Of a stretch of DNA of 64,000 nt, positions 17,525-60,497 are shown piece by piece. The notes below the pieces were generated by a model. It saw nothing but the letters and a program-made list of their open reading frames with translations. It searched no databases and was not told the DNA's origin. Location of the stretch: positions 124,001 through 188,000 of IMG/VR virus record IMGVR_UViG_3300008261_000001. One strand, written 5' to 3'. Both the position numbers and the translations under genes were made by a program. Numbering within the stretch: the stretch's first letter is position 1; every line of letters begins with the position of its first letter.

Positions 17525-18130
17525 ATGTCTATTGCACCTTCAGCGGAAAAGGTGGCGAAGCAGTATTTATCCAAAACTGCATCTGAACCTAAGGGTAAGG
17601 GTATTGGAAAGACAGCGGGTGAGGTTAGGTTCATTAAAGACCACGGAGACGACTCGTCTGCGTGGGCGTGGGGGCAACACCCACCTAGTCAGAGAACAAT
17701 GGATAAAAACCATCAGTTCAATAAGAGGTGTAGTAAGGACATGGCTAGAGTTCTGAGGGCGACTTTATCCGCACTTGGTCATGCCATGAGTGCCTACAGT
17801 GTGTTTGCTAAGATTAAGAGCCGAGACATAAGTCCCGATGGGAACTTGGGTGGTCGAGGCTACATAATGGAAATCAAGGGTATGCGTAGGCAATACATGA
17901 ACATCGTGGAGGCTCTCTCCGCCTTATCCGATACGCTGTATGACGAAATGACAGCGGATCATTGGAAAGAGGTACAGGAGAAGATGGTTCAGAAGGTCAT
18001 GCAAGATATTGAGGAAATAAAGGATGACCCAGAGGGTTGGGCTATTCAAGAAGAGACTGAGACCGATGAAGAGGGGTTGCGTAGAGATTTAACCTCGCCT
18101 AGAGACGATGAGGAGATGCCAAATGAGTAA
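17525..18130 (+). CDS. Hypothetical protein, probable virion head component
   Basis: AAGGAG RBS; KVA/KTA motifs near N-terminus; first gene of the plus-strand head block. Confidence 0.7.
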   Translation: MSIAPSAEKVAKQYLSKTASEPKGKGIGKTAGEVRFIKDHGDDSSAWAWGQHPPSQRTMDKNHQFNKRCSKDMARVLRATLSALGHAMSAYSVFAKIKSRDISPDGNLGGRGYIMEIKGMRRQYMNIVEALSALSDTLYDEMTADHWKEVQEKMVQKVMQDIEEIKDDPEGWAIQEETETDEEGLRRDLTSPRDDEEMPNE

Positions 18131-20498
18131 GACTAAAACCGCTACAAGTTATCTCCCAAATGGGGGGTATTCACTTGAACATGGCTCTAACTATATGTTG
18201 GACGGTTTTCAGTTCGATACCGAGTATGGAGCTGGTCCATACGAAAAGGCTCGTCTGCCCGAGGCAAAAGGTTTATCCTCTTTGCCTAGTGGGATGATTC
18301 CTATGGATAGCTCAGGTGAGTCCTCTTTACCCGATGGGGTGGAGGTGGATTTGCAGTTAGACCTAGAGGAGATGACTAAGGATGCGAGTCAGAATATCGC
18401 TCTTGTAGATCACTCTTGGCTTGCTACACAGTCTGAGCCTGATTTGTCTGGGCAGAGGTCACTTGAGGATATTTACGAGCATTTGGCGAAGGGGCGTTTT
18501 GAGAACCCTGAGGTGAATCAGTTCAAAAATCTTCAAGACGCTTGGGGAACTGAGAGCACTACGGGTTTGGACATAATCCCTAATACTCAACGCCACCACG
18601 AAAAGTACAAGAACACCTATGAGGGCGTATCCAAAGTCCCTGGTGATGATGAGCGTCAAGAACTAGAGAAAATCCGTAGGAAGCTCGCCTATGGCGAACC
18701 TCTATCTCTTATCCTAAAAGAAGCCTCTGACCCTTTATCCATTAAGGGAGTTGTAGAGGCTGATTATGGATTATCGGGGAGGGTGTACATCAAGGAAGCC
18801 CATTTCCCTGGGTTGTTCAACGGTCGTTGGAACGAAGTCCTCACTAATAGGTGCAAGACAGCGATGTACATTGTGTCTGCACATAAGGATTGTGCGTTCG
18901 ATAGATTTTTGGGTATGGAGGTGGTGAAGTCTGTTAAGGATATTCCGTGGAGGAAGGTAGCCTCTGCTTTATTGCCGAGATTGGAAACTTACGGCATCCG
19001 AGTAGCGTCCGAGGTAAGCGATAAAGATAGAGTGCGTCTTGCCTTCATAGACTTGATTGAGGGCAGAGTAGCTCGTCATGAACCAGCTCAGTCTTGGTTC
19101 CCCACCCAGCGTGACGACACCGCTTTGATTTCTTTGGATCATGCAAGGAGGAAGCTCGAAGCCTCTCAAGTAGAACACACTTTCATAGCCTCTCAAGAGG
19201 TGGTGGAAGAGGGTAAAATCGCCAAGAGGCTTGATAGGATATCCAAGCAGATTGTCGAGCAAGGTTTATTGGATAAAGAGATAGTGGAGTCAGTTGTAGG
19301 TACAAATAAGACTGCACAACAAAAAATAGACAGACTGTATCAGTTATCCGCACAATCTTTAAACCCTGTTGTGGGTGACTATAAGGGTCAAGGTGTTGGA
19401 TTGACCGCGACCTCGACGAAGGTGTCTTCTTTTACAGAGGCGGATAGGCAGTCTTTAAGAGAAGCATCCGCTAGGGGAGATACACAGAGGAATACTAAGG
19501 CGATGGAGAAGATAGCACTTCTCATCAAGGCTGGGTTGATTACACACGACGAGGTTGCCGTGGCTATTAAGGGGGTGAAAGATCCTGATGGCAGAGTGGC
19601 GAGTGTATGCTCTTACATTGCCAAACCAAAAGTCGTGGGGACATATAACGACTACGACCTCAAAGAACACCGCATGGTGAAGCACTCCAAGAAGTTGGAT
19701 GAGCTTCCAGATATGGAAAAGAGGGCGAGTGCTAATCTATGGCGTGAGGCTCATGCTAAGGTGGATCAGCTTCTCAAGAGTGGTTTACTGAGCAAGCACG
19801 ACTTCGACTCTATCCAATCCATAGGTGACGCTAATGCGTATGTAAAGAAGGCATTTGACTTAGCTTCCAAGCCCTCAAGCGTGTCTACCTATGAGGGAAC
19901 AGAGACAGCCCACATCATCACCAAAAAGACATCGGATAAGTTATCCGATACGGAGTTAAAGGTGGCGACTTGGTTGCGTCAAAAGATGAGCGAGGGGTCG
20001 GCAGGTCAAGAACTCGATGTGTTGTTGAAGAGCAGATTCTCTGAGAAGGTATTGGATACTTACGGCACAAAGATAGCTTCTCTTAGGTCACAACACGAGG
20101 GTTTAGCGGGTCACGCTTATGTAGACGCAGGTGCTTACGCCACCGAGGGAGCCGATGGTTGTGAGAAGGGTGCTTTGCTCCACAGGGCGAATCAAGTACC
20201 TGTGGTGCTGATGGTGGATAAGTGTGCGTCTTGTGTGTTCAATGTGGAGGGTACTTGCCAAAAGTACAATAAGGCTCTCATTACCTCTCCTGTAGAGATA
20301 ATCGAGGACTTATCCGATTATCAGCGTGAGAACATACGGCTTGCGAACGGCACAGACGCGGACAGAACGGCTTCCCTTTTCGTGAACGACTATGATCCTG
20401 ATGAGTTTGGACTACTTACGCCCGACCAAGTAGAAATATCGGACGAAGTATCCAATAAGGCATTGGGGGATGTGTTGTTCGGTGGCTTTGAGGTCTAA
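18123..20498 (+). CDS. Large hypothetical protein, probable head component with internal repeats and Cys cluster
   Basis: Start MSKTKTA after AGGAG; repeats GLSGRVYI/GLAGHAYV and LIKAGLI/LLKSGLL; CxxC..C near C-terminus. Confidence 0.7.
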   Translation: MSKTKTATSYLPNGGYSLEHGSNYMLDGFQFDTEYGAGPYEKARLPEAKGLSSLPSGMIPMDSSGESSLPDGVEVDLQLDLEEMTKDASQNIALVDHSWLATQSEPDLSGQRSLEDIYEHLAKGRFENPEVNQFKNLQDAWGTESTTGLDIIPNTQRHHEKYKNTYEGVSKVPGDDERQELEKIRRKLAYGEPLSLILKEASDPLSIKGVVEADYGLSGRVYIKEAHFPGLFNGRWNEVLTNRCKTAMYIVSAHKDCAFDRFLGMEVVKSVKDIPWRKVASALLPRLETYGIRVASEVSDKDRVRLAFIDLIEGRVARHEPAQSWFPTQRDDTALISLDHARRKLEASQVEHTFIASQEVVEEGKIAKRLDRISKQIVEQGLLDKEIVESVVGTNKTAQQKIDRLYQLSAQSLNPVVGDYKGQGVGLTATSTKVSSFTEADRQSLREASARGDTQRNTKAMEKIALLIKAGLITHDEVAVAIKGVKDPDGRVASVCSYIAKPKVVGTYNDYDLKEHRMVKHSKKLDELPDMEKRASANLWREAHAKVDQLLKSGLLSKHDFDSIQSIGDANAYVKKAFDLASKPSSVSTYEGTETAHIITKKTSDKLSDTELKVATWLRQKMSEGSAGQELDVLLKSRFSEKVLDTYGTKIASLRSQHEGLAGHAYVDAGAYATEGADGCEKGALLHRANQVPVVLMVDKCASCVFNVEGTCQKYNKALITSPVEIIEDLSDYQRENIRLANGTDADRTASLFVNDYDPDEFGLLTPDQVEISDEVSNKALGDVLFGGFEV

Positions 20499-20509
20499 GG
20501 AGAAACGAT

Positions 20510-23819: not shown

Positions 23820-24071
23820 ATGACCGAGCCCATTTATCCAAAGAGTCGTAAGAGGGCGGACTACAGGGTGATAGCGAGGATCTTGGAGTTAAGCCACGGT
23901 CAGAACCACCCAAGTGATGACTTGCTAGAGGAGATTTCCATTTTCTACAAGAGCAAGGGGGGGACTTGGGTAAAGTTTTTTGAGGGTAATCCGGATCATA
24001 ATAAGTTATTAAAAGCAGCGATCTCGTTTATAATGAAGCAAAAGAAGGAGCTGTATGATAGACGACAATGA
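23820..24071 (+). CDS. Hypothetical protein
   Basis: 83 aa, GGGAG RBS, between terL and portal. Confidence 0.65.
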   Translation: MTEPIYPKSRKRADYRVIARILELSHGQNHPSDDLLEEISIFYKSKGGTWVKFFEGNPDHNKLLKAAISFIMKQKKELYDRRQ

Positions 24072-25740
24072 TGAGATGGGTAAGCCTGTAGCCGAGATTA
24101 AACAGAAATCTAAGGTGAGCACGAGGAAGTTGTCTCCAACGGAGATGAAGTCCCGTGTTAAGGTCGCTATGACCACAGGCGGTTCGATGATGGGTAGCGG
24201 TGGAAACTTCTACTCACCTGAACTATCCACAGATTTCTTAGAGCTACCCCAAAGCCAAGACGAGCAAAGGAACTACTTTAGGTTCTTTTATCGCACGGAT
24301 CCCTTTGTGGGGCAAGCGGTGGACTTACACACAGAGTTGCCGTTATCCAAAATCCGCTTGGGGTTGCCCAAAGCTAAAAATAGGGATATGGCTTATGAGG
24401 CGTTGCGGTTTTGTGAGAAGTGGTCGAAGCGTGTGGGTTTGCTTCATAGGCTCATAGAGATACTGCACGAGTACAACCTTTTGGGTGAGGTGTTTGTTTT
24501 CTGTGAAGACAATAACCCCGATATGCCCAAGACGGTCACACACAAGAAGATCAATAAGCTCACTCGTGAAGGGGAAGCGATTGAGGATTGGGAGGAGTAC
24601 GAGGACTCTCTAGATAGAGCTTACAAGTGGCTTAAAAAGAACTATAAGGGTTGGACAAGCCTAAAGGTATTGCCACCCGAACAAGTACATATGGAGACTT
24701 TTCCATTTACATCCGAAAAGATCGTGGAACTGATTCCAGACTCCAAGACAAAGGCGGTGGTGGAGCGAGCTTCCATGCAAGACCCCTCTGCAATGAGGGT
24801 CGTAGAGTCAATGCCTTCTGATGTAGTGGAGGCACTAAGGGAGGGTCGCAACATCCCCTTAAACACAGATCCAGATGCTGGTAGCTTTGTGTACTTCATG
24901 GCTCGTAAGAAGTCTCAGTATGAGCCAAGAGGTCACTCTATCCTAGAACGCTGTCTGCGTATCCTTATTTACAGGGATAAGCTGAGGCAAGCCCAGACCT
25001 CGATAGCGTCTAGACACATGACACCCATACGCCTTGTCTATGCGGAAGACATGGACGCGGCTGATGTCGAGGCGTTGCGTGACCAAGTGGACTTAGCTCT
25101 GCAAGACCCAGATTACTCGATCATTGCTAACTTCCAAGTGTCTTGGGAGGAGATGGGTGCTGATTCGCGTCTATTGGACTTGAGCGGTGAGTACGATATG
25201 ACGGATAGACAAATGTACGCGGGCTTAGGCGTGACTGAGTCTCTGTTGTCGGGCGAGTCTAGCTACTCAGGCGATAGGATAAACCTAGAGGTCATTAACA
25301 CACGCTATATGCTCATGCGTGAAGTGCTTCAAGAGATGGTGGAGGAAAATATCCTAAAGCCCATGTGTAAGCGTATGGGCTTCATAGAGGAAGACGAGGA
25401 CGGAGAAGAGGTAGTCGTTCACCCAACCTTGAGCTTTACTCGCTTAGGGTTGAGGGATAACCAAGACACCTTTGACGCTCTCTTTAATCTCTATCAGAAG
25501 GGTTCTTTGGACATCGACATCATCTTGGAGTTGTTGAACATAGACCCACAGACGACCAAAGCGAAGCTAGAGAGGGATATGTTCACGCTGAACGACTCTC
25601 AGTTCAACGAGGTGTTGAGGGGCATTTATGGAGATGCAGGGTCTAAGCTGGCTGAAAACTCTGACGCGATAGAGCGTATCGCTAGAAATCTAGGTTTGAA
25701 GTACACACCTCCAGCGGATGAAGATGGCGGTCGGTTCTAA
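24055..25740 (+). CDS. Portal protein
   Basis: 561 aa after terL; FYRTDPFVGQAVDLHTELPLSK, RGHSILERC, GLGV..SLLSGESSYS. Confidence 0.8.
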   Translation: MIDDNDEMGKPVAEIKQKSKVSTRKLSPTEMKSRVKVAMTTGGSMMGSGGNFYSPELSTDFLELPQSQDEQRNYFRFFYRTDPFVGQAVDLHTELPLSKIRLGLPKAKNRDMAYEALRFCEKWSKRVGLLHRLIEILHEYNLLGEVFVFCEDNNPDMPKTVTHKKINKLTREGEAIEDWEEYEDSLDRAYKWLKKNYKGWTSLKVLPPEQVHMETFPFTSEKIVELIPDSKTKAVVERASMQDPSAMRVVESMPSDVVEALREGRNIPLNTDPDAGSFVYFMARKKSQYEPRGHSILERCLRILIYRDKLRQAQTSIASRHMTPIRLVYAEDMDAADVEALRDQVDLALQDPDYSIIANFQVSWEEMGADSRLLDLSGEYDMTDRQMYAGLGVTESLLSGESSYSGDRINLEVINTRYMLMREVLQEMVEENILKPMCKRMGFIEEDEDGEEVVVHPTLSFTRLGLRDNQDTFDALFNLYQKGSLDIDIILELLNIDPQTTKAKLERDMFTLNDSQFNEVLRGIYGDAGSKLAENSDAIERIARNLGLKYTPPADEDGGRF

Positions 25741-25902
25741 TAGATTATTTATACTCCAAGATAGCGGATAGGTTAACCCTTAACCCAACCCCTGTCTTGG
25801 AGTAATCAAGATGAGAACAGCATCGGAAGTATTAAGAAGCCTTGAGGCTCGTATCGCTCGTTTAGAGGGTCGCACAGCTTCTTCAAAGAGAAGTGCAAGC
25901 CT
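25725..25902 (+). repeat. Direct repeat copy 1 (portal 3' end + promoter + UTR hairpin + leader codons)
   Basis: Near-identical to 26380-26557. Confidence 0.92.
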
Positions 25903-26293
25903 TACCCCCCACCTTCGTAAAGTTTCTTCGATGATGAAATTAAACTTCAAAGTGTACACAGATGACTATGACCTTTCAGAGGATGATAGGGATATGCTCC
26001 TTGATTCCGCTGTTAAGCACCTAAGTAAAGTATTCGGTGGGAGGGTAAGTATTGATGGTGGTAGTTATGGAGAGTTTCATCTGTGCAGTATGGGTGTGAC
26101 TCTAAAAGAGGCAGGGGAGATTATGAGTCTTGTGGAAAGAAAAGATGTTGGTCATCTCACCATACCCGTAGGAATGGGAGCCTCCCCCGTTTACGCACAA
26201 GACTTCTATCTAAGTGATGTTCGTGGGAAAACTATTGCTGAGGGAGATGATCTGATTGAGTATCTTACTAATGCAGGTGTGATGATCAACTAA
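25811..26293 (+). CDS. MRTASEVL-leader cargo protein 1
   Basis: Shared 31-aa leader; GGAG RBS. Confidence 0.85.
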   Translation: MRTASEVLRSLEARIARLEGRTASSKRSASLTPHLRKVSSMMKLNFKVYTDDYDLSEDDRDMLLDSAVKHLSKVFGGRVSIDGGSYGEFHLCSMGVTLKEAGEIMSLVERKDVGHLTIPVGMGASPVYAQDFYLSDVRGKTIAEGDDLIEYLTNAGVMIN

Positions 26294-26379
26294 GCCTTAG
26301 TGCTAAGTTTATTAGTGGTTTTGACTCAATAAACCCTTTATGAACCAACACCCCTAGATTTATCGCCCATAATGAACCC

Positions 26380-26557
26380 TGGCGGTCGGTTCTAATAGAT
26401 TATTTATACTCCAAGATAGCGGATAGGTTAACCCTTAACCCAACCCCTGTCTTGGAGTAATCAAGATGAGAACAGCATCAGAAGTCTTAAGAAGCCTTGA
26501 AGCTCGTATTGCCCGTTTAGAGGGTCGCACAGCTTCTTCAAAGAGAAGTGCAAGCCT
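26380..26557 (+). repeat. Direct repeat copy 2
   Basis: Near-identical to 25725-25902. Confidence 0.92.
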
Positions 26558-26963
26558 CACCGCCCCCCATCGTAAATCTGCCTCTCATAACGATATGGAC
26601 TATAAAGTTTGGACATATGATTTGATGTTCACTCTTTATCAAGAAGGCAGCATCCTTTCAGATGACGAACTGGAAAAAATGCTCAGAGCGAGTGTTAATG
26701 ATCTAACAAAGATATTTGACGAAAAAGTATATATTGAAGATTATATGGATGGGAGACTTTCATGCGGTATTTCAAATTTGGATCTAGAATCCGTCCATCG
26801 GATTATGAAATATGTGGATAGATTTGCTGTAGGTCCTTACACCATAGAAACAAGACGGGGATCAGGTGTTTACGCAAATGGCTTTGTGCTGTTGGACGAC
26901 AACTCCGGTCGCCGCGTGGCGGAGGGGGACGAACTGATGGATTTGCTTGAGAGGTGGGCGTAA
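26466..26963 (+). CDS. MRTASEVL-leader cargo protein 2 (distant paralog of cargo 1)
   Basis: Identical leader; cargo aligns weakly with 25811 (VGHLTI/VGPYTI, IAEGDDL/VAEGDEL). Confidence 0.85.
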   Translation: MRTASEVLRSLEARIARLEGRTASSKRSASLTAPHRKSASHNDMDYKVWTYDLMFTLYQEGSILSDDELEKMLRASVNDLTKIFDEKVYIEDYMDGRLSCGISNLDLESVHRIMKYVDRFAVGPYTIETRRGSGVYANGFVLLDDNSGRRVAEGDELMDLLERWA

Positions 26964-27665: not shown

Positions 27666-30600
27666 ATGAATGTCTTTTCCTTATTGCGTGAAATAGAGGC
27701 TGTGGGCGAAAGGATTGAATCGCTCTCTAGGAGGGTGGGTTTAAATGTTCGCACAAGTGCTAAAAAGAAAAAGGATACCCCTCTCTCTGAACAAGCGAAA
27801 TCGAACTTAAAAGACAACACCTACAAGGATGTAGACACAAAAAAGGACATATCCTTTGGGACTGCTTTAAAGAAAGAGCACCCAAAGGCGGTCAAGGACT
27901 ACAAAAAGGAGTTGTCCAAAATAAAGGGAACGAAGAAGCCCCTAAAGAACTCAGAGTACAGATCGGGTGGTCAGTTTTCAGCCGATGTAAGAGTAGACCT
28001 TGAGGGGGCGTTCTCAAACGCGAGTGTAAGGGTGGATATTGAGAGCTTATCAATACCACAAGAAATGGGTATGAGAGCCGTTATAAGTGTTGTGGTTAAT
28101 GTGGCGACCGATATAGACGATGGCTATGAGTATGAGGAAAAGGAAAAAGGTGCTAGGAAACCTAAACAAAAGGGTTTGGATAAACAAAAGGGTTTGGATA
28201 AACAACAAGTCTTACCCAAAGACAAAAAGGCTCGTGTCAAAAAGATAAAAGATAAACTCGACGAGGTTTTACCCACACAGATAGATCTCCCCAACGGAGA
28301 AACCCTACCCGTTAATACGGAGGCTTTATCCAATATGACTACTGAGCGTCTAGAGGAGACACAAAAGACTCTAGACGCTCGTGCTGAGGAAAGGCAAGAA
28401 ACAGACTCCGAGTCTAAGGCTGATGAGAAGTCTTTATCCGAGCAGATAGAAAAGAAGATTTATTCGTCTAAGCTAAAGACAAGGGAAGAGCCAAGTGAGC
28501 TAGAGTCCGCGTTGAATCGGACAATAGATAAAATGTTCGAGGACGACGAGGGGTTTTTGAGTTCGGAGAAGGTACGGACTCAAAAGAGCGAGCTAAAGGG
28601 TCTTACGAGGTCGATTCAGTCGATGTCGCTCGAAGAGGCTGAGGAGGTGGCTAAGGCGTATGAGAAGCAAGGGGAGAGCCTCATAAACTCTTTTACGGGC
28701 AAAGACAGCGACTATGAGGGATTGAGTGAGCTTTACAAAGCCACACAAGAGGTTTTAAAAGCTGGGATACCTCAGAACCCTTTAGAGGATGAGGATATAG
28801 AGCATAAGCTCTTGGCGGAAGCCTCATTGGAAAAGTTATCCAAAGTCTCCAAACTCGATCAGCTAGAGACACTTAATGAAAAGCTAAAGGATAAGTCCCT
28901 TTCCAAAGAGGAAGCAAAAACCATTAAAGAGGAGATATCCAATATTGAGAAGGGAGCTAAAGCGTTATTGGAGGCAGAGGGCATTGATCCTTCAGCATAT
29001 AAAGCCTTCGTAGCGTACAGAAAGAATCCAGAAAAAGGGTTCAAAGATTTCGCCTCTGCTTTGGAAAAGTCCAAGTGGATGTCGGATAACTTAGAAGATA
29101 TACAAGGCGAGGTAGATCAAAAGAAGTCGGCTATAACCAAGCCCTACAGAGAGCAAGTTGGTAAGTATCTGGCGGCAAAAGCGATGGAGGAGGGATTTAT
29201 TCGAGATCCCATGTACGGAGTAAAGAGTATTGGAAAGACCGATATGAACGACTCTGATGTGGTAGCTCATCGCAGGCAGGTTAGGATAAACCAAGCTAGG
29301 CGATATAAGCAGATGAGTTCTGAAATACGCGATCTAGCCGTCCTAGAAACACAAGACTTATCCAATGACAACGCAAAGCTGATTGCAGAACTCGAAGAGA
29401 AACAATCTAAGGGTGAGGATGTATCCCAAGCCTTACAACAAGCGAGGGAGAAGCAGAATCAATATCAAGACACTCTTGCGGGCTTAAATACAGCAAGGCT
29501 TTTATTGGGTGAAAAGCCTATAGATGGTTTTCAAGAGGTCGATGAGAACCTCTTGAACTTAGCCAAGAGCGTAGACGACAATAATCTTTTAGAGGCGGTC
29601 TCCGTTTTAGGTTCACCCACAGGTGGGGGTAAAGACAGAGAACAAACACGGGAGGCTGTTAAGGGTGCCTTATCCGAAATGTCCTTAGATCGTTTTGGGC
29701 AGATCGTGGGAGATCAGTACGAGGATATGCTCGATGTCCTTAAACCCACTTACTGCCCATCTACACCAAAAAACGAAGCGGCAGGTTTAGCGGATAAACA
29801 TCTTACGGAGGGGCAGAAGTGTCCAGAGCCTTTAGACCCACGACTACATGACCTTATGCGTAGGTACATCACTGACTCGTATGCAGACACACAAAGCATA
29901 CGGAGTGAAGATAGGGGTGGTTTCGATGAAGGTAGATCGAAACAAGTATCCACTCAACAGCGTAAGGAGTTCAAAGAGCTTTGGGATAAAAGCAAAGAGG
30001 AAGTCCTAAAAGCCATAACCATGAGCGAGGACGACCCCGCATATGATGAAGACGCTGTGGTGAGTACCCTAGAGCTATTTGGGTTGGAACTGAGGATGAG
30101 GAACTATGAAACGCTGATGGTGGACGGCAAGAAGATAGTCGGTCATGAAGCCATCATGAAGTACATCCGCAAGGTTCAAGAAATGGATAAGAAGGAGCGA
30201 GAGAAAAAGGTAAAGGAGTTGGCGAAGCAGTTTGAAGATTTCTTAAAGCAGAATGAACCTGAGGCTTCTGAAACACCCCCTCGTACAGCAAATATATTTA
30301 ATAAATCTTTTATAGACCCACGCTTAAATATCGCAGGAGACTTTCTTATGAAGAAAAGTGCGACAACCTATGTGGACTATCAAGCTCTAGCCTCAACATT
30401 TGAGGTTGGGATGAGTGTATTTACGCATAGTGGTGGCGATCCTGCTCGATCAGGTGTTGTGGTTGCCGTATTTCCAGCTATTGGAATGGTCGATGTACAG
30501 TTTCCACACGGAAGCACTCGTCTCCCAGTAGAGGATCTTGTCATTGACCATACTAAAGAAATAGCACCACTACCGGATAGTTTGATATCCGTACCTGGCG

Positions 30601-30854
30601 GTGTGGGTACACAGCCTGTGTCTTTAGGTGTAAAGCGTGTAGCTTCAGCCTATATGGAAAAGACAGCACTTTATTGGTGGGCTAAAGATAGGGTGTACAG
30701 AAAATCGAAATCCGAGGTTAAACCATCGTGTCCTAAGTGCAAAGACATGATGAAGCCCTCGGTGTATAAGAGGCGAAATGGAAAGAGCGACAGACTTTTA
30801 GTTTGTACCTCTTGTGTTTTCGTCATAAAGACCACCGACATCGTGGAAGGATAA
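27666..30854 (+). CDS. Large charged helical protein with C-terminal Zn ribbon; probable head protein
   Basis: 1062-aa ORF; CPKC..CTSC at C-terminus; internal in-frame start at 30348. Confidence 0.75.
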   Translation: MNVFSLLREIEAVGERIESLSRRVGLNVRTSAKKKKDTPLSEQAKSNLKDNTYKDVDTKKDISFGTALKKEHPKAVKDYKKELSKIKGTKKPLKNSEYRSGGQFSADVRVDLEGAFSNASVRVDIESLSIPQEMGMRAVISVVVNVATDIDDGYEYEEKEKGARKPKQKGLDKQKGLDKQQVLPKDKKARVKKIKDKLDEVLPTQIDLPNGETLPVNTEALSNMTTERLEETQKTLDARAEERQETDSESKADEKSLSEQIEKKIYSSKLKTREEPSELESALNRTIDKMFEDDEGFLSSEKVRTQKSELKGLTRSIQSMSLEEAEEVAKAYEKQGESLINSFTGKDSDYEGLSELYKATQEVLKAGIPQNPLEDEDIEHKLLAEASLEKLSKVSKLDQLETLNEKLKDKSLSKEEAKTIKEEISNIEKGAKALLEAEGIDPSAYKAFVAYRKNPEKGFKDFASALEKSKWMSDNLEDIQGEVDQKKSAITKPYREQVGKYLAAKAMEEGFIRDPMYGVKSIGKTDMNDSDVVAHRRQVRINQARRYKQMSSEIRDLAVLETQDLSNDNAKLIAELEEKQSKGEDVSQALQQAREKQNQYQDTLAGLNTARLLLGEKPIDGFQEVDENLLNLAKSVDDNNLLEAVSVLGSPTGGGKDREQTREAVKGALSEMSLDRFGQIVGDQYEDMLDVLKPTYCPSTPKNEAAGLADKHLTEGQKCPEPLDPRLHDLMRRYITDSYADTQSIRSEDRGGFDEGRSKQVSTQQRKEFKELWDKSKEEVLKAITMSEDDPAYDEDAVVSTLELFGLELRMRNYETLMVDGKKIVGHEAIMKYIRKVQEMDKKEREKKVKELAKQFEDFLKQNEPEASETPPRTANIFNKSFIDPRLNIAGDFLMKKSATTYVDYQALASTFEVGMSVFTHSGGDPARSGVVVAVFPAIGMVDVQFPHGSTRLPVEDLVIDHTKEIAPLPDSLISVPGGVGTQPVSLGVKRVASAYMEKTALYWWAKDRVYRKSKSEVKPSCPKCKDMMKPSVYKRRNGKSDRLLVCTSCVFVIKTTDIVEG

Positions 30855-30858
30855 GCAC

Positions 30859-32244
30859 ATGGCTTTTTTAAGATATGCTAAGGCTAATGTGGTCAATCCT
30901 CAACTCAACTTTAAGGGTTGGGATAAGGTGCGTGTGGCGAGTGGTTCTAAATCTTCATTGGGTGGTGGATTGGTTCAGAAAGCCCAAGACATCTTGGGTG
31001 AGCCTTGCACACCTGAGAGGTTTTTACTTACCCACTCAACCATAGTCTGTTCAGTAGATGCGGTAACCGTTCCTAACTCCAAGACGGGTTCTATCGTAGA
31101 GCAAGGCTTAAAGATTAACCGCAAGTACGCTAATTGGCGAGTCACATCTGAAACGGATAAGTTCATAAATAACAACCTAGATTGTTGGTCTAGGGAGGTT
31201 ATTATGAAGTCCTACAAGACTTTCATTGGGGCTCAGAACTTTTTGGAGCATATACAGGTTGAAGAACTCTCTAAGGGTCGGATTATTGATGCTGTTCTTC
31301 GAGATGTTGGTGAATCTTTATATGTGGACATCTTGGTAGCCACTGACAGAAAACACACCGACTTGGTTAATCAAATAATCAAGGGCGAAATGAACGCCAT
31401 GAGCATGGGTTGTTCTGTAGAGGCGACCATATGCACCAAGTGCGGTCATGTGGCTGCGGATGAGACTGAGTTCTGTCCCCATGTGAAGTACGAAAAGGGA
31501 AATGTCTTTTATGACGAACAGGGTAATAAGCACCGAGTTGCAGAACTCTGTGGACATGAGGACATGGGCGAGACAGGTGGCGTGACTTTTATTGAGGCAT
31601 CTTGGGTGGCAACCCCTGCCTTTAAGGGTGCAGTCACTCGTAATATCCTTGAGCTTCCTCAGACTAAACAAGCCTCAGAAGCTATCCTAAATCAAATCCC
31701 ATCGGCTTGGTTATCCAAAGTGGCTGGTCCGTTTGATGACGAGGAAGAAGATGCAGGAGAGGAAGCTCCCGCTGAACCCCCCAAGTCACTTATGCAACAG
31801 CTAGAGGATGTGTATCAGACAGCTATCCTCGATAGGTTGCGTGTAAAGCTAGAGAACGAAATCAAAGAGGAACAGGCTAAGTTAGTCTTAAATCCTCCTA
31901 TTGATAAGTCCACGGCTGAACAGAACGACACCGTCATTAAAGAAGGGTCTCGTACTCTAAAGAAATCCTACTTAAAGGCATTAGAGTTAAGTATTAAGAC
32001 TGCCTCTAGCATAGACGAGGCAGTCTTGAACTTATCTTTGGTTAATAGCCATTATGGGGTAAAGATACCTGCTCACATTTATAAGCTCGCCCAAAAGCTA
32101 GGGTCGGCTTCTAACTTTAAGAGCGTAGACTCTTACCTCAAGCAAGCCAATGTTTTACATGGCTCAAATCTTTCTGAGTCGGATAAGGTAAAACTTATCC
32201 GATTTGCAAAGCTCCTCTCCCTCCACCAATCGGGCAGAAAATAA
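30859..32244 (+). CDS. Prohead (capsid maturation) protease with Zn-finger insert
   Basis: NFLEH, GRIIDA, MSMGCSV..ICTKCG..CPH, FIEASWVATPAF; upstream of scaffold and capsid. Confidence 0.75.
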   Translation: MAFLRYAKANVVNPQLNFKGWDKVRVASGSKSSLGGGLVQKAQDILGEPCTPERFLLTHSTIVCSVDAVTVPNSKTGSIVEQGLKINRKYANWRVTSETDKFINNNLDCWSREVIMKSYKTFIGAQNFLEHIQVEELSKGRIIDAVLRDVGESLYVDILVATDRKHTDLVNQIIKGEMNAMSMGCSVEATICTKCGHVAADETEFCPHVKYEKGNVFYDEQGNKHRVAELCGHEDMGETGGVTFIEASWVATPAFKGAVTRNILELPQTKQASEAILNQIPSAWLSKVAGPFDDEEEDAGEEAPAEPPKSLMQQLEDVYQTAILDRLRVKLENEIKEEQAKLVLNPPIDKSTAEQNDTVIKEGSRTLKKSYLKALELSIKTASSIDEAVLNLSLVNSHYGVKIPAHIYKLAQKLGSASNFKSVDSYLKQANVLHGSNLSESDKVKLIRFAKLLSLHQSGRK

Positions 32245-32272
32245 GTCCTGCCCCACTCGAAAGGAAATACCT

Positions 32273-33757
32273 ATGTCAAGGTATGGTCGTAGATTGAATC
32301 GTAGGGCTACCTCCGCTATGCCCGGTACTGATAACCTCGGTTGGGACAGCTTCGGTCACCCCGCCTCTTCCGCACAGCCCGAAGTCGATGCTTATGGTTT
32401 CGACGCTGAGTTTGGTGAGGGTGTTCGTAAGGGCCCTTATCGCTCTGGTCCTGCTCCCGCCTCTTATGGTTGGACACCTGATCATCCTGCCGCTAAGGAT
32501 ACTTTAGTTGAGGACTTTGCCTTAACTGAGGATCTTCGTAATGAGAACCTCAAGCTCGCTATGGAGCGTAAGGCGGCTAAGTGTATCCGTATTGCTGAGT
32601 CTCGTCTTGGCAAGAAGGCTTCTCCCCGTGAGATCGAGGAACTAGCCCTTCGTTTTATGGATCTCCCCAATCACACCATCAACGCTCGCGTTGCTTCTCT
32701 CTCTCGTAGGGCAGACAATGCAGTGCAAGTGAACACTGGCTATGATCAGGGTCTCGACTTCACAGGTCCTTTCAACGCAGAGGACGAGCTAGTCGCTGAC
32801 GATATGTGGGCAGACGACCTTGAGGCTGATGAGCTTGAGGCACATGGCATCTCTGACGAGTACGACTTCGACATGGACGGCATGGTATCGAGTGAGGAGT
32901 GGGGTGGCTCTGAGAGCGTGTTCGACTCTATGGACAGCGATGCAGACGGTTTCCTCGACCATGAGGAGATGTCGATGGGTCTTGGTGAGTCTTTTGCGGA
33001 AGACATGATGGGTTCACGCATGGCTTCAAGGCGTGTTCGTGCTCAAGAGACCACCGCTGCTGATTTACTTGCTGAGGAGCTTGCAATGCTCAAGGCGGCT
33101 AACGCTCGCCTCGCTCGTCAAGTCCGTAAGTTAGCGGACAACACCACACAGCAGAACACAGGCTACACTGTCGAAGACTTCTCTGAGAAGATTGAGACCA
33201 AGCCTGAGTTTGAAGAGGGTATGGGCGAGCCTACCCCTCGCCTTGCAAGTCGTAAGCCTAGCCTCAATCGTCTTGCTACTGCTCTTTCCGAGTACATGGC
33301 AGATCAAAATGATCCTCGTGCCTTCTATAGCAAGCCCTCTGAGAAGAAGGCTGACTTCATGGCTGACGAGATGGCTGAACTCATGGCTGAACTTGAGGAG
33401 ACCTCGGGTGAGGATGTCATGGGCTTAGACTCAAGCGAGGCTCAAGCGTCTGCAATGGATCCCAAGCTCGCCCGCATTTTCCAAGCCGCTGACGAGGCTG
33501 AGGAAGAGGCTGAGGAAGAGGCTCCTGAGGAAGAGGCTGAAGAGGAAGAGGTCAAGATGACCGATGACGAGGAGGAGGAAGAAGAGAAGCCTGCTCCTAA
33601 GAAGTCTGAGGCTAAGAAGGCTTCCTATCGTCCTAAGGCACCTGCTCGCCAAGCGTCTGTGAAGACCCTCGGCAACATCAGTCGTGAGGCATCAGCTTCC
33701 GATGAGCTTTCCAAGCTCTGGGAGACTGCTCCTGATGTGAGCAAGTTCTTTAACTGA
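32273..33757 (+). CDS. Capsid scaffolding protein (acidic, EF-hand pair)
   Basis: Very acidic with coiled coils; between protease and capsid genes; start at 32273 after AAGGA. Confidence 0.7.
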   Translation: MSRYGRRLNRRATSAMPGTDNLGWDSFGHPASSAQPEVDAYGFDAEFGEGVRKGPYRSGPAPASYGWTPDHPAAKDTLVEDFALTEDLRNENLKLAMERKAAKCIRIAESRLGKKASPREIEELALRFMDLPNHTINARVASLSRRADNAVQVNTGYDQGLDFTGPFNAEDELVADDMWADDLEADELEAHGISDEYDFDMDGMVSSEEWGGSESVFDSMDSDADGFLDHEEMSMGLGESFAEDMMGSRMASRRVRAQETTAADLLAEELAMLKAANARLARQVRKLADNTTQQNTGYTVEDFSEKIETKPEFEEGMGEPTPRLASRKPSLNRLATALSEYMADQNDPRAFYSKPSEKKADFMADEMAELMAELEETSGEDVMGLDSSEAQASAMDPKLARIFQAADEAEEEAEEEAPEEEAEEEEVKMTDDEEEEEEKPAPKKSEAKKASYRPKAPARQASVKTLGNISREASASDELSKLWETAPDVSKFFN

Positions 33758-47960: not shown

Positions 47961-48005
47961 TTCATTTATACCCATGAAGGGGTCAGGCACCCATTCATGG
48001 AGTAA

Positions 48006-48566
48006 ATGGATATGAGAACTGCAGGTGAAGTATTAAGAAGCCTAGAGTACAGAATAGCTCGTTTAGAGCGTCAGTCTGCTCGTGTTCGCCCACCAGCTCC
48101 ACAGCGTACTCCATCCACTAGGGGTCGTATGAAAGATCTGTCTGTACACTCAGACCTTCTAACTGCTTTGCAGTTGATCTATCATTACTCTGAAGCTGAC
48201 AGATTGGCTTTCACAAGTGAGTTGTCGAGTTATAAGGGTGTTTTTGAGGTTGGTGGGTGGCCAGGAACTCATTACGACTCAGCCACTAATAGTATTGTTT
48301 TCTACCTTACCCTAGAGGGCAATCCTAACACAATTCACCGTTTGGCTGATAAATATGGCATAAATATCATAGATGTTTCCATAAAGTTAGACGGACAGAA
48401 GAACGATAAGACCGTCTATGAGTTGGGTTTGAGCTTAGACTCGGCTAAATACAAGGGTGTTTGGAAGGAGTTTATGGGCAACGCTTCTATGCAGAACACC
48501 CTTCGTGAGCTTCCTGAAGCTGTAAGACGCTCGGAGCGTTTGTTCTTTGGTATCGACTTTAAGTAA
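48006..48566 (+). CDS. MRTAGEVL-leader cargo protein
   Basis: MDMRTAGEVLRSLEYRIARLERQSA leader; AATA-N5-TTTAT at 47956. Confidence 0.85.
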   Translation: MDMRTAGEVLRSLEYRIARLERQSARVRPPAPQRTPSTRGRMKDLSVHSDLLTALQLIYHYSEADRLAFTSELSSYKGVFEVGGWPGTHYDSATNSIVFYLTLEGNPNTIHRLADKYGINIIDVSIKLDGQKNDKTVYELGLSLDSAKYKGVWKEFMGNASMQNTLRELPEAVRRSERLFFGIDFK

Positions 48567-59265: not shown

Positions 59266-59287
59266 CTCATTTAAGGGGTACACAAAG

Positions 59288-59485
59288 ATGAATCAGATAC
59301 ACAAGCGTGTTTGGGACTTTGTCAGTGAATCTCTTGGCACTAAAAAAAGAACCTTAAAGTCCCATATGGAAGGGAGCTTTAAAACCCCTTTTGGATACAC
59401 TCACGAGGCTTATACTGCGTTGCTTGAAGAAGAGATTTCTACGCTTGAGAAGATCCTAGAGAAGATAACTAACTTAGACGACTAG
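59288..59485 (+). CDS. Small hypothetical protein
   Basis: MNQIHKR start after AAGGGG. Confidence 0.55.
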   Translation: MNQIHKRVWDFVSESLGTKKRTLKSHMEGSFKTPFGYTHEAYTALLEEEISTLEKILEKITNLDD

Positions 59486-59624
59486 GCTCTTATAATGGAT
59501 ACCGAACGGAGGTGTCCAAGTATGAACGGAAACTTTAACTTTATGGTGTTCTACGCGGTGGTTTCTTTGCTTGTGTGGTTCTTTTGTGCGGACTATGAGT
59601 TCATAGCGTTTATGATATGCTTAC

Positions 59625-60497
59625 TCAGCGTTGGGCATTTCTTCGGTTGGATGCTTGACGAACTCGGTTATGAGTAGCTTGCCACCTTGAGGCGACCCGT
59701 TTGTGAGCGAGCTTTTGCTGTCCGAACTCTTTCTCGTACCAATCAAGATAACCTGGTGCATCCTCTGAAGACTCCGCCCCACTTATCCATTTTAAGTAGG
59801 CAGGTGTGAGTAGCTCGGTGATGGGGATTTGTGAAAGAGCCGCCGCCTTAGCGGGACCAATAAACTTAGAAGCCCAAACAGGCATAGAGTGCAATACCAC
59901 TTCCACAATCACGATGGGTAGTGCAGTCTTGATTCCGTACTTCTTAACCGCGTGTACGATTTGCTTTATGAGTTCAATGGGGTTGAGGGTGTGCAGTATA
60001 TCGCTTAGTTTAGTGGAAACCACCTTTTGACCTACAAGGTCACTCCACTCTCGTAATCCTTGCTCCACCACCATCTTTTGGAGTCTAGGACTCCAAGTAC
60101 TGCCTCTGTTCTCCTCGTAGTACATATATCCAGCGTTCCAATCCTCATTGCCCTTAGAGGGCTTGAGGTCAAGCTCGGCATAACCCTCTGAGAAGGTCAG
60201 CTCTTGTTGACGAGCCTCAAATCCTGCTTTCCATTCTTCCACATGGAGTTCTATCTGAGCCTCTCGGATAACCCTCGTCATCTCAGGGGCGAGGTGCTTA
60301 ATCGTGATGTCGAAGAGTTCCTCAAGAGGCTGACCCCACAGCTTCTTAGGCAGATCCACGAGTTTCATTGTGGGGTTTTTGATATAGTCAACGAAGAAGG
60401 TTTTGAGGCTGTCACCTACACCAGCTTCATGCTCAAGTAGAGCGACTTTTACTTGTAGTTCTGCGATACGCTTTAGCTGTGCTTGTCTATCCATCAT
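59625..60497 (-). CDS. Hypothetical protein with leader-like N-terminal helix, possible virion protein
   Basis: AGGAG RBS; RQAQLKRIAELQVKVALLE; C-terminal KRVASRW. Confidence 0.7.
   Translation of the reverse strand: MMDRQAQLKRIAELQVKVALLEHEAGVGDSLKTFFVDYIKNPTMKLVDLPKKLWGQPLEELFDITIKHLAPEMTRVIREAQIELHVEEWKAGFEARQQELTFSEGYAELDLKPSKGNEDWNAGYMYYEENRGSTWSPRLQKMVVEQGLREWSDLVGQKVVSTKLSDILHTLNPIELIKQIVHAVKKYGIKTALPIVIVEVVLHSMPVWASKFIGPAKAAALSQIPITELLTPAYLKWISGAESSEDAPGYLDWYEKEFGQQKLAHKRVASRWQATHNRVRQASNRRNAQR

What the first reader, a model, noticed from the sequence alone, without database searches (positions are those of the whole stretch)
17525..60497. [KR]-x-A motif pervades head-region proteins: putative basic-P3 maturation cleavage code
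Seen: KVA/KTA (17525), KTKTA (18123), RIA (20510), KVA (portal N-region), RVA/KKA (27036), KSA/RVA/KTA (27666), RYA/RVA/KQA/KVA/KTA (protease), more than ten in the scaffold (RRA, KKA, RVA, RMA, KLA, RLA, RQA, REA), RFA/KSA/RVA (48626), RTA (58409), KLA/RVA/RQA (59625). They cluster near termini and in linkers and are often followed by S. Known: T4 gp21 and phiKZ gp175 cut after x-x-E motifs in many head proteins. Inference: the protease at 30859 cuts after [KR]-x-A, so the motif would predict which hypothetical genes are internal head proteins.
Basis: partly seen in the sequence, partly recalled or inferred. Interest (0 to 1): 0.68.

Follow-up and report, generated by a model that had tools for sequence, protein, structure and literature searches.

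The report
Head-protease cleavage code [KR]-x-A-S
A 290-kb uncultivated jumbo phage carries a strongly over-represented four-residue motif, Arg/Lys-x-Ala-Ser, in its scaffold, its head protease and many small proteins that share one N-terminal leader. The motif is most likely the cutting signal of a herpesvirus-like head protease and would mark which unknown proteins are packed into the capsid.

Summary
Across all 322 ORFs of the 290-kb genome, [KR]-x-A is only mildly enriched (731 vs 630). Most of that excess comes from [KR]-x-A-S: 120 observed vs 49 expected, z=10, reached by 0 of 1000 shuffles. R.AS is the top of about 8000 gapped tripeptides, and R.AS and K.AS rank 1 and 2 in two related genomes. 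Only Ala (P1), Ser (P1') and Arg/Lys (P3) are selected.

The sites concentrate in 24 genes:
- a scaffold-like protein (7 sites);
- a 796-aa head-module protein (10 sites);
- the protease itself (3 sites, flanking its catalytic domain);
- about 16 small genes scattered over the genome that share the leader M-RTAS-EVLRSLEARIARLE, about half of them with a second site just downstream.

The major capsid protein and portal have none.

The protease domain folds like herpesvirus assemblin and T4 gp21 (Z about 10). Assemblins cut Ala|Ser. The scaffold's best-conserved sites lie just before its conserved C-terminal tail, like the herpesvirus M-site.

Best reading: [KR]-x-A|S is the prohead protease's cleavage code, and the leader is a capsid-targeting propeptide. 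Cleavage itself is inferred, not shown. This is a new variant of the T4/phiKZ scheme.

The parts
30859..32244 (+). Prohead (head maturation) protease, 461 aa. The catalytic domain is about aa 36-270 (30964-31668) and carries an inserted Cys3-His/Cys zinc ribbon. [KR]xAS sites: RVAS aa25 (30931-30942), KQAS aa270 (31666-31677), KTAS aa380 (31996-32007).
   Evidence: phrog_18299 head maturation protease, E 5.5e-17. Domain model pLDDT 94.5. VIA-align Z 10.2 VZV protease, 9.9 PRV, 9.7 T4 gp21; the best unrelated fold scores <=6.5. The N-terminal site is kept in 26 of 28 orthologues and the aa380 site in 17 of 28; the linker after the domain holds a site in many, at shifting positions.
32204..33757 (+). 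Scaffold-like acidic protein (517 aa from TTG 32204; ATG at 32273 is the likelier start). It has 7 [KR]xAS sites at aa 137, 162, 272, 346, 471, 482 and 494, and a conserved C-terminal tail DELSKLWETAPDVSKFFN.
   Evidence: 7 sites vs 0.69 expected, p 8e-6. Orthologues are 28-78% identical but keep 3-10 sites (median 7). The sites at P1 139, 473 and 496 are kept in 26, 20 and 28 of 29 sequences, and the tail after the last site is nearly invariant. It lies between the protease and the MCP.
18108..20498 (+). 796-aa head-module protein of unknown family (likely start at M6, 18123) with 10 [KR]xAS sites. Predicted to be cut into many pieces, as a core, internal or ejection protein would be.
   Evidence: 10 sites vs 0.70 expected, p 4e-9. 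Orthologues in G002 (42% identity) and G003 (34%) carry 10 and 9 sites. Most positions differ; the KDAS (aa91), K/RIAS (aa655) and R/KTAS (aa753) positions are shared. No Pfam or PHROG hit.
25811..26293 (+). Small cargo candidate (160 aa). Leader aa 1-24 (25811-25882): M-RTAS-EVLRSLEARIARLEG-RTAS, followed by RSAS.
   Evidence: leader HMM E 3.5e-14. AATA-N5-TTTAT and a 5'UTR hairpin lie upstream.
26466..26963 (+). Tandem paralogue of 25811 (165 aa) with an identical leader (26466-26537) and 4 sites (aa 2, 21, 27, 37).
   Evidence: Its 90-nt upstream region is nearly identical to that of 25811.
36291..36686 (+). Small cargo candidate (131 aa). Leader from aa 3 (36297-36368): MRTAS-EVLRSLEARIARLES-RTAG.
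48006..48566 (+). Small cargo candidate (186 aa). Variant leader from aa 3 (48012-48083): MRTAG-EVLRSLEYRIARLE.
   Evidence: promoter-like motif upstream.
35593..36261 (+). 222-aa ORF with RSAS at aa 5 and an internal leader (ATG at aa 95; MRRSAS-EVLRSLEQRVAS, aa 95-112). Either a two-part cargo polyprotein or a second start.
   Evidence: Three sites vs 0.23 expected. The leader HMM hit lies at aa 97-119. The N-part matches a free-standing 69-aa gene in G003.
17525..18130 (+). 201-aa protein with one N-terminal site (KTAS, aa 17-20). A weak substrate candidate.
   Evidence: Its [KR]xA count is not above expectation.
59625..60497 (-). 290-aa protein with two sites close to its C-terminus (RVAS aa267, RQAS aa280). 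Candidate for a C-terminal propeptide.
   Evidence: [KR]xA 10 vs 3.5, z 4.0. [KR]xAS 2 vs 0.18. Coordinates.
27666..30854 (+). 1062-aa protein upstream of the protease with one site, RVAS at aa 991, 70 aa from the C-terminus. Otherwise not enriched.
   Evidence: The site is kept in 9 of 14 orthologues. [KR]xA 10 vs 12.1.
34531..35409 (+). Major capsid protein (292 aa), with no [KR]xAS site. Context: it appears not to be a substrate.
   Evidence: phrog_2522, E 2.7e-51. 88-99% identical among relatives. The window copy has no site and only 4 of 22 orthologues have one.
24055..25740 (+). Portal protein (561 aa), with no [KR]xAS site. Context.
   Evidence: phrog_16240, E 6e-35. No site in 15 orthologues.

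Best explanation
The window is the head and tail module of a 290-kb uncultivated jumbo myovirus. Its prohead protease (30859-32244) is a serine protease of the herpesvirus-assemblin / T4 gp21 fold. It most likely recognises Arg/Lys(P3)-x(P2, preferably Thr or Val)-Ala(P1)|Ser(P1') and cuts between Ala and Ser.

Inferred order of events:
1. The scaffold-like protein, the protease, the 796-aa protein and a set of small cargo proteins co-assemble inside the procapsid.
2. The cargo proteins are brought in by a shared N-terminal amphipathic leader ([KR]xAS + EVLRSLEARIARLE), acting as a capsid-targeting sequence.
3. The protease frees its catalytic domain by cutting after aa 27 and in the linker after aa about 270.
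4. It detaches the scaffold from the shell by cutting just upstream of the conserved C-terminal tail, and chops the scaffold and the 796-aa protein into pieces.
5. It trims the leaders off the cargo.

What is shown: the motif, its specificity profile, its distribution, its conservation across the clade, and the protease fold. What is inferred: that the motif is cleaved, that the scissile bond is A|S, that this protease does it, and that the leader targets proteins to the capsid.
For: 1. An unbiased scan of all X.YZ patterns puts R.AS first in this genome (70 vs 22, z 10.2), with K.AS at 50 vs 26. R.AS and K.AS rank 1 and 2 in the related genomes G002 and G003. All 40 related loci analysed (41 found; the 100%-identical L002 was left out) are above expectation, 1.6- to 8.8-fold and mostly 4- to 8-fold.
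2. The position scans are clean. Only A at P1, only S at P1' and only R or K at P3 deviate strongly. P2 prefers T and V.
3. All synonymous codons are used, including CGN and AGR for Arg and TCN and AGY for Ser, so selection acts on the protein and not on a DNA word.
4. The excess is concentrated. 24 genes hold 65 sites vs 5.7 expected; the other 298 hold 55 vs 42.
5. Site counts are conserved while most positions turn over: scaffold 7/9/9 and the 796-aa protein 10/10/9 in three genomes.
6. Anchor sites are conserved. The protease N-terminal site is kept in 26 of 28 sequences. The scaffold sites directly before its near-invariant C-terminal tail are kept in 28 of 29 and 20 of 29. This geometry matches the herpesvirus R- and M-sites, which are A|S bonds (PMC4498786).
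7. Protease fold: Z 10.2, 9.9 and 9.7 to the VZV protease, the PRV protease and T4 gp21. All top 37 structures are such proteases.
8. About 16 genes in this genome share the leader, at least 10 do in G002, and at least 11 carry a variant (MISQ-KLAS-LEARIAKLE) in G003. This parallels the T4 capsid-targeting propeptides (PMC9026906).
9. The MCP and portal carry no site.
10. In the cultured relative Tunturi_5, 10 of the 11 sites in a 40-kb head/tail region lie in the protease, the scaffold-like gp332 (one of them 15 aa from its C-terminus) and the annotated 'DNA ejection protein' gp328.
Against: - There is no protein-level evidence: no virion proteome or N-terminal data exists for this clade, and the Tunturi paper has none.
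- The genome-wide pairwise test found no better positional conservation of [KR]xAS sites than of control motifs. Retention was 33% to G002 and 10% to G003, and identity at the motif positions was not clearly above that of the flanks. About 40% of the sites are expected by chance, and most cargo genes lack detectable orthologues, so this test is weak.
- The only site present in nearly every leader is the one at the extreme N-terminus. Cutting there would remove just 4-7 residues and leave the helix attached. A site after the helix is present in only about half of the leaders.
- Docking the protease domain with a 45-aa cargo N-terminus gave no answer.
- The catalytic triad could not be mapped residue by residue.
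- The more distant family member Rhodococcus phage E3 shows no enrichment, so the code is not a property of the whole protease family.
Confidence: 0.65

Rival explanations
1. [KR]-x-A-S is a short docking or recruitment motif that binds a pocket of the procapsid interior, the scaffold, or the protease's substrate groove, and is not itself a scissile site. The multivalent scaffold, the 796-aa protein and the leader-tagged cargo would use it to be retained in the capsid.
For: The motif at the extreme N-terminus of nearly every leader is the best-conserved leader feature, yet cutting there would remove only 4-7 residues. Site number is conserved rather than site position.
Against: The sites flank the protease's own catalytic domain and sit exactly before the conserved scaffold tail. 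These are classical autoprocessing and release positions. The strict small-residue pair Ala-Ser matches the scissile bond of the structurally related assemblins. Docking and cleavage are not mutually exclusive.
Confidence: 0.12
2. The motif is cleaved, but by another enzyme (a host protease or a second phage protease), not by the product of 30859-32244.
For: No direct link between the enzyme and the motif has been shown. Only co-occurrence across the clade is established.
Against: The motif co-varies with this protease subfamily. In 91 representative homologues it occurs 212 times vs 38 expected, often at the same N-terminal position. It also occurs in Tunturi_5. Its substrates are head-module proteins, and the related fold cuts A|S. 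No other protease was looked for systematically.
Confidence: 0.07
3. The motif is a modification site, for example a basophilic Ser kinase consensus (R at -3 of Ser) or another Ser or Arg modification of virion proteins.
For: R/K-x-x-S is formally a basophilic kinase pattern.
Against: The strict requirement for Ala at -1 is not typical of such kinases. No Pkinase-family gene was found in the 290-kb genome, while the same search hit the control genomes. The distribution at domain boundaries, leaders and the scaffold tail fits processing better.
Confidence: 0.04
4. The enrichment is an artefact of amino-acid composition, coiled-coil periodicity, paralogous leaders or a DNA-level repeat.
For: Leaders are paralogous and inflate the counts. 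The scaffold is Ala-, Lys- and Arg-rich.
Against: - Within-protein shuffles keep composition, and none of 1000 reach the observed count.
- Neighbouring patterns ([KR]xA[not S], [not KR]xAS, [KR]xSA, [KR]xGS) are at expectation.
- Removing the first 50 residues of every protein still leaves 77 vs 38.6.
- The 796-aa protein has 10 non-repetitive sites.
- All synonymous codons are used.
- The result is replicated in two other genomes and in a cultured relative.
Confidence: 0.02

Closest known systems
Bacteriophage T4 gp21 prohead protease with the capsid-targeting sequences (CTS) of the internal proteins IPI, IPII, IPIII and Alt
   Same: - The protease fold matches gp21 (Z 9.7 to 5JBL).
- A short three-position motif is used on the scaffold or core, on the protease itself and on many internal proteins.
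- Unrelated small proteins share a short N-terminal propeptide, in T4 10-19 residues cleaved off after targeting (PMC9026906).
- The internal-protein genes are poorly conserved between relatives.
   Different: - The motif is [KR]-x-A-S, not L/I-x-E, with opposite charge at the key position and a P1' requirement.
- The leader is a roughly 20-residue amphipathic helix that begins with a copy of the motif. Only about half of the leaders have a second site behind the helix.
- The MCP appears not to be processed.
- The protease carries a zinc-ribbon insertion and a 190-aa C-terminal helical domain.
- There is no Pfam-level sequence membership.
phiKZ gp175 / Salmonella phage SPN3US gp245 prohead proteases of giant phages (S/A/G-x-E motif)
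   Same: A giant phage in which many head and ejection proteins carry N-terminal propeptides and several copies of the protease motif. The protease cuts itself (PMC10052503).
   Different: A different motif and a different, shared leader sequence. This is an unrelated phage clade; the nearest records are the uncultured huge phage LR745208.1 and Tunturi_5. Here everything is predicted from sequence alone.
Herpesvirus assemblin (HSV/PrV pUL26, HCMV UL80a) with its R- and M-sites
   Same: - This is the best structural match (Z 10.2 to 1VZV, 9.9 to 4V08).
- The herpesvirus scissile bond is Ala|Ser.
[quoted passage not shown] The conserved sites here sit in the same places.
   Different: - P3 is basic here and, from my recollection of the literature rather than a check made here, hydrophobic (V/L/I) in herpesviruses.
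- Protease and scaffold are separate, non-nested genes, and the protease C-terminal domain shows no similarity to the scaffold.
- Many more substrates and a cargo leader are present.
- Sequence identity is about 9%.

Membership tests
Assemblin / T4 gp21-like prohead serine proteases (MEROPS clan SH) | Characteristic assemblin/gp21 beta-barrel fold | tested here: met
   The domain model has pLDDT 94.5. VIA-align gives Z 10.2 (1VZV, rmsd 2.7, 115 aligned), 9.9 (4V08) and 9.7 (5JBL, 126 of 165 aligned). The top 37 rows are all such proteases, and the next fold scores Z<=6.5. The Foldseek top hit is 5JBL, probability 0.93.
Assemblin / T4 gp21-like prohead serine proteases (MEROPS clan SH) | Catalytic His and Ser (plus a third His, Asp or Glu) at equivalent structural positions | tested here: inconclusive
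   H59, S65, E130, H131, D144, D157, S182 and S248 are invariant in 79 homologues. No residue-level superposition was available, so the triad is not assigned; H59 and S182 are the candidates. Inteins in homologues insert at or near the SMGC (S182) motif.
Assemblin / T4 gp21-like prohead serine proteases (MEROPS clan SH) | Sequence-family membership (Pfam S77/S78/S21 or PHROG) | tested here: inconclusive
   There is no Pfam hit at E<=0.01. PHROG phrog_18299 'head maturation protease' scores E 5.5e-17. A PDB sequence profile search found nothing.
Assemblin / T4 gp21-like prohead serine proteases (MEROPS clan SH) | Gene sits in the head module next to the scaffold and major capsid protein | tested here: met
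   The gene order is TerL, portal..., protease, scaffold-like protein, 201-aa protein, MCP.
T4-type capsid-targeting propeptide (CTS) system | A short N-terminal sequence shared by otherwise unrelated small proteins | tested here: met
   About 16 genes match the leader HMM at E<1e-5. Their mature parts have no Pfam family (10 tested). Their mutual unrelatedness was judged from the sequences, not by pairwise comparison. The same holds in G001, G002 and G003.
T4-type capsid-targeting propeptide (CTS) system | The propeptide ends at a protease recognition site | tested here: inconclusive
   11 of 13 leaders in G000 begin with [KR]xAS; two have RTAG or RKAT. Only 6 of 13 (G000), about 3 of 10 (G002) and 4 of 11 (G003) have a site after the helix.
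T4-type capsid-targeting propeptide (CTS) system | The tagged proteins are found inside the head and the tag is removed by the prohead protease | not testable with these tools
   This needs virion proteomics or fusion-packaging experiments.
Herpesvirus-type R-site / M-site processing | A site between the protease domain and its C-terminal extension, and a site shortly before the scaffold C-terminus upstream of a conserved tail | tested here: met
   The protease linker has a site at aa 270-273, and many orthologues have one in that linker. The scaffold's REAS lies 21 aa from the end and is kept in 28 of 29 sequences, followed by the near-invariant tail DELSKLWExAPDVSKFF.
Herpesvirus-type R-site / M-site processing | Protease and scaffold are in-frame nested products sharing a C-terminus | tested here: not met
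   They are separate genes, and the protease C-terminal 173 aa show no similarity to the scaffold.
Herpesvirus-type R-site / M-site processing | Hydrolysis of the Ala|Ser bond | not testable with these tools
   Inferred only from the strict Ala-Ser pair and the shared fold.
Basophilic Ser/Thr kinase phosphorylation site (rival) | A kinase is available and position -1 is tolerant | tested here: not met
   No PF00069 match in the genome, although the same search hit the control genomes. Only Ala is accepted at -1.

The most novel reading that the evidence does not exclude
A widespread clade of uncultivated huge phages (2295 cluster representatives match the protease profile at E<=0.001; the motif itself was confirmed in three genomes, 40 related loci and Tunturi_5, but not in the distant member Rhodococcus phage E3) uses a previously undescribed two-part packaging code. 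The first part is a modular leader, '[KR]xAS + amphipathic helix', that tags about 10-16 fast-evolving cargo genes per genome for encapsidation. The second part is an assemblin-like protease with Ala|Ser specificity shared with herpesviruses, which would suggest that A|S cleavage is ancestral to the phage-herpesvirus protease lineage. The invariant motif copy at the very start of the leader may act as bait that docks cargo into the protease's substrate groove, making the protease itself the cargo receptor. If so, the whole injected proteome of these phages, which are candidates for anti-defence and take-over effectors, can be read from sequence.
Probability: 0.35. Interest if true: 0.78.

Novelty: new variant of a known kind. 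Interest (0 to 1): 0.66.

Why it matters
Prohead-protease specificities are known experimentally for only a few model phages, such as T4 and the phiKZ/SPN3US group. Here a specificity can be read directly from genomes because the motif is the single most over-represented gapped tripeptide in three huge-phage proteomes.

If confirmed, it would do three things:
- It would give a rule ([KR]-x-A|S plus a recognisable leader) for predicting which of the many hypothetical proteins of these uncultivated huge phages are packaged and probably injected. That class includes anti-restriction and host-takeover factors in T4 and phiKZ.
- It would supply a portable capsid-targeting tag for a new phage group.
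- It would link phage and herpesvirus maturation more closely, through the same fold, the same Ala|Ser bond, and the same release-site and tail-site geometry.

The cultured relative Tunturi_5 makes the prediction directly testable.

Tried and rejected
- Megablast of the protease-scaffold region against GenBank phages found no match.
- Pfam on the head proteins was largely empty.
- The full-length protease AF2 model with 17 sequences was poor (pLDDT 48) and not used for fold search; only its low-confidence and helix boundaries are quoted for site context. The domain-only model with 79 sequences replaced it.
- A PDB sequence-profile search found nothing.
- Complex prediction with the protease domain and a 45-aa cargo N-terminus scored 0.02, 'no answer'. 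This is not evidence either way.
- The leader HMM did not hit the scaffold or the protease, so a 'leader derived from the scaffold helix' idea is unsupported.
- The protease C-terminal domain shows no similarity to the scaffold.
- The genome-wide pairwise test of positional conservation of sites against control motifs showed no excess. I keep this as a caveat.
- The kinase idea: no Pkinase gene in the genome.
- Membership in the bS21-encoding freshwater huge-phage clades: no S21 gene.
- The 796-aa protein shows no similarity to the Tunturi_5 'DNA ejection protein' gp328.
- The distant family member Rhodococcus phage E3 shows no motif enrichment, so the code does not extend to the whole protease family.
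- Literature searches found no description of this motif or leader. Absence from the held library is not proof of novelty.

Full report
**What the window is.** The window is bases 124001-188000 of a 290,179-bp IMG/VR virus record (CheckV 93%). It holds:
- the large terminase (21910-23766) and the portal (24055-25740);
- a head maturation protease (30859-32244; phrog_18299, E 5.5e-17);
- a major capsid protein (34531-35409; phrog_2522, E 2.7e-51);
- a 1605-aa protein with a tail-sheath C-terminal domain just under Pfam's cut-off (26.2 vs 26.9 bits; 52940-57757).

This looks like a jumbo myovirus, on the weak sheath hit and the myovirus relative Tunturi_5. The nearest GenBank records are an uncultured 485-kb huge phage, LR745208.1 (TerL 64% identical), and, distantly, Tunturiibacter phage Tunturi_5.

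**Checking the observation.** I called 322 ORFs over the whole genome and compared motif counts with per-protein composition and with within-protein shuffles.
- [KR]-x-A is weakly enriched: 731 vs 630 +/- 23, z 4.4.
- Listing the contexts showed that the enriched proteins carry [KR]-x-A-S.
- An unbiased scan of all X.YZ patterns put R.AS first (70 vs 22.1, z 10.2), with K.AS at 50 vs 26.
- [KR]xA[not S] (610 vs 575) and [not KR]xAS (463 vs 438) are at background.
- [KR]xAS as a whole is 120 vs 48.8 +/- 7.0, and no shuffle out of 1000 exceeded 70.
- Single-position scans are clean. Only Ala at P1, only Ser at P1' and only Arg (stronger) or Lys at P3 deviate strongly. P2 favours Thr and Val.
- All synonymous codons are used at the three fixed positions, so this is selection on the protein, not a DNA word.

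Several of the proteins it listed (portal, 27666, 48626, 17525, 20510) are not enriched.

**Where the sites are.** The head region 17525-60497 holds 40 sites vs 9.0 expected, and the rest of the genome 80 vs 39. The excess sits in 24 genes (65 vs 5.7); the other 298 are near expectation (55 vs 42).

In the window the enriched genes are:

| Gene | Sites | Note |
|---|---|---|
| 796-aa protein, 18108-20498 | 10 | p 4e-9 |
| scaffold-like protein, 32204-33757 | 7 | |
| 26466-26963 | 4 | leader-bearing |
| 25811-26293 | 3 | leader-bearing |
| protease, 30859-32244 | 3 | |
| 35593-36261 | 3 | internal leader |
| 59625-60497(-) | 2 | near the C-terminus |

Sources. The MCP and portal have none, and the 1605-aa sheath-like protein is below expectation for [KR]xA (3 vs 6.5). 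Sites are twice as frequent as expected in the first 50 residues (43 vs 21). Even after removing the first 50 residues of every protein, 77 vs 38.6 remain.

**A shared leader.** Four window genes (25811, 26466, 36291, 48006) and at least nine genes elsewhere in the genome begin with M-(x0-2)-RTAS-EVLRSLE-x-RIARLE. This is often followed by G/R-[RK]xAS. An HMM of the leader finds about 16 genes at E<1e-5.
- The helix has an a/d hydrophobic pattern (L8, L11, I15, L18).
- The mature parts have no Pfam family; 10 were tested.
- The leader profile finds 16, 11 and 7 copies in the related genomes G001, G002 and G003.
- G002 uses MRRTAS-EILSDLEIRIARLE. G003 uses a shortened variant, MISQ-KLAS-LEARIAKLE-...-K[KQ]AS.

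In all three genomes the leader starts with a copy of the motif, with two near-miss variants (RTAG, RKAT). Only about half of the leaders have a second site behind the helix.

**Replication in relatives.** I found 41 related IMG/VR loci (protease 46-100% identical).
- All 40 loci analysed (the 100%-identical L002 was left out) are above expectation for [KR]xAS, 1.6- to 8.8-fold and mostly 4- to 8-fold, and most are near expectation for [KR]xA[not S].
- In the complete genomes G002 (275 kb) and G003 (316 kb), R.AS and K.AS are ranks 1 and 2 of all gapped tripeptides.
- Site numbers are conserved (scaffold 7/9/9, 796-aa protein 10/10/9), although most positions differ.
- Some anchor sites are strongly conserved in otherwise variable proteins. 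The protease RVAS at aa 25-28 is kept in 26 of 28 sequences. The scaffold KKAS (P1 139) is kept in 26 of 29.
- The pair RQA|S...REA|S is kept in 13 and 28 of 29. It lies directly before the near-invariant C-terminal tail DELSKLWExAPDVSKFF.
- In 91 representative homologues of the protease, the motif occurs 212 times vs 38 expected. About half carry it at the same N-terminal position; others have RTAA or RTAG there.
- In the cultured Tunturi_5, 10 of the 11 sites in a 40-kb head/tail stretch fall in three proteins. These are the protease gp331, the scaffold-like gp332 (4 sites vs 0.54 expected, one 15 aa from the C-terminus) and the 'DNA ejection protein' gp328 (5 sites vs 0.85 expected).
- Rhodococcus phage E3, a roughly 30%-identical family member, shows no enrichment.

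**A negative result.** A genome-wide pairwise test found that [KR]xAS sites are not retained at aligned positions more often than control motifs. Roughly 40% of sites are expected by chance, and the cargo genes mostly lack orthologues, so the test has little power. Still, the evolutionary signal is count conservation plus a few anchor sites, not general positional conservation.

**The protease.** The full-length AF2 model was poor. A domain model (aa 36-270) built with 79 homologues drawn from an exhaustive profile search (2295 relatives; alignment) reached pLDDT 94.5.
- Foldseek ranks T4 gp21 first, followed mostly by herpesvirus proteases.
- VIA-align gives Z 10.2 (VZV protease), 9.9 (PRV) and 9.7 (T4 gp21). 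All 37 top entries are such proteases, and unrelated folds score 6.5 or less.
- H59, S65, E130, H131, D144, D157, S182 and S248 are invariant. C192, C195, C206 and H/C208 form an inserted zinc ribbon.
- The triad could not be assigned without residue-level superposition.
- The three motif copies lie in the low-confidence N-terminus, directly after the last strand of the domain, and between two helices of the C-terminal domain.

**Interpretation.** Herpesvirus assemblins cut Ala|Ser at an R-site behind the protease domain and at an M-site shortly before the scaffold C-terminus, which frees the scaffold from the capsid-bound tail (PMC4498786). T4 gp21 uses the short motif L/I-x-E on the scaffold, on itself and on internal proteins. 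The 10-19-residue N-terminal propeptides of those internal proteins are capsid-targeting sequences (PMC9026906). SPN3US and phiKZ do the same with another x-x-E motif (PMC10052503).

The present system has the T4/phiKZ logic and the herpesvirus bond and site geometry, with a basic P3 and a new leader. I therefore take [KR]-x-A|S to be the cleavage code of the 30859 protease (confidence 0.65), and the leader to be a capsid-targeting propeptide.

Rivals:
- a docking motif that is not cut (0.12);
- cleavage by another enzyme (0.07);
- a modification site (0.04; no kinase gene);
- an artefact (0.02).

One puzzle remains. The nearly invariant motif copy at the very start of the leader would remove only 4-7 residues if cut. 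It may instead serve as bait for the protease groove.

**Novelty.** Searches of the held literature found no description of this motif or leader, and the Tunturi paper has no proteomics. I rate it a new variant of a known kind: proteolytic head maturation with targeting propeptides.

Noticed in passing
window 25721-25810, 26376-26465, 47940-48005; also upstream of leader genes elsewhere in G000 (genome 21486-21575, 21932-22021, 121823-121912, 212877-212966, 219746-219835): Most leader-bearing cargo genes are preceded by TTTAT(A) and then immediately by a strong 5'UTR stem-loop. Its 3' arm contains the Shine-Dalgarno GGAG (for example ACTCCAAGATAG...CTGTCTTGGAGTAATCAAGATG). MFE is -21 to -38 kcal/mol in 73 nt. 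The leader genes average -22.9 against -14.6 for all genes (Mann-Whitney p 8e-4). This may be a late-mRNA 5' stabiliser or a translational switch.
   Followed up: partly
Homologues of window 30859-32244 (P0002, P0028, P0051 and many others): Many protease homologues are 800-1850 aa, with the 235-aa domain split into 2-4 pieces. The insertions are inteins (Hint + LAGLIDADG, Pfam E down to 5e-22), up to three per gene, at invariant Cys/Ser motifs including SMGC (S182). The window's own gene is intein-free.
   Followed up: partly
window 31432-31560 (protease aa 192-233): A zinc-ribbon-like insertion (C192, C195, C206, H/C208; C231 in 75 of 79) lies inside the assemblin/gp21-type protease domain. 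It is conserved in 79 homologues.
   Followed up: partly
window 34531-35409: The major capsid protein is 88-99% identical among relatives whose protease is only 46-83% and whose scaffold is 28-78% identical. This is unusually strong constraint on, or recent exchange of, the capsid gene. At 292 aa it has no delta-domain-like propeptide.
   Followed up: no
window 25811-26963: 25811-26293 and 26466-26963 are tandem paralogues with nearly identical (88 of 90 nt) upstream regions and identical 30-aa N-termini but diverged bodies. This looks like a recent duplication of a cargo cassette.
   Followed up: partly
window 35593-36261: This ORF has a full leader internally (ATG at aa 95), flanked by motif copies. 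Its N-part matches a free-standing 69-aa gene in G003 (251245-251454). It is either a fused two-cargo polyprotein or two overlapping translation units.
   Followed up: partly
window 32204-32272: The scaffold ORF as called from TTG 32204 overlaps the end of the protease gene by 41 nt. The in-frame ATG at 32273 (MSRYGRRLN...) is the more plausible start. A weak EF-hand-like match lies at aa 238-257 (Pfam E 1.5e-5, below cut-off).
   Followed up: no
L086 (Rhodococcus phage E3, NC_021347.1 38464-41151): In this distant relative the protease domain is fused to a roughly 650-aa acidic, low-complexity scaffold-like extension (895 aa in total), a herpesvirus-like fused architecture. It shows no [KR]xAS enrichment.
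   Followed up: partly
G000 genome 45006-45497 (-), window coordinates -78994..-78503: A leader HMM hit (E 1.8e-9) lies at the C-terminal end (aa 142-161 of 163) of a crude ORF. It is probably a mis-called or frameshifted gene, or a remnant of a leader gene.
   Followed up: no
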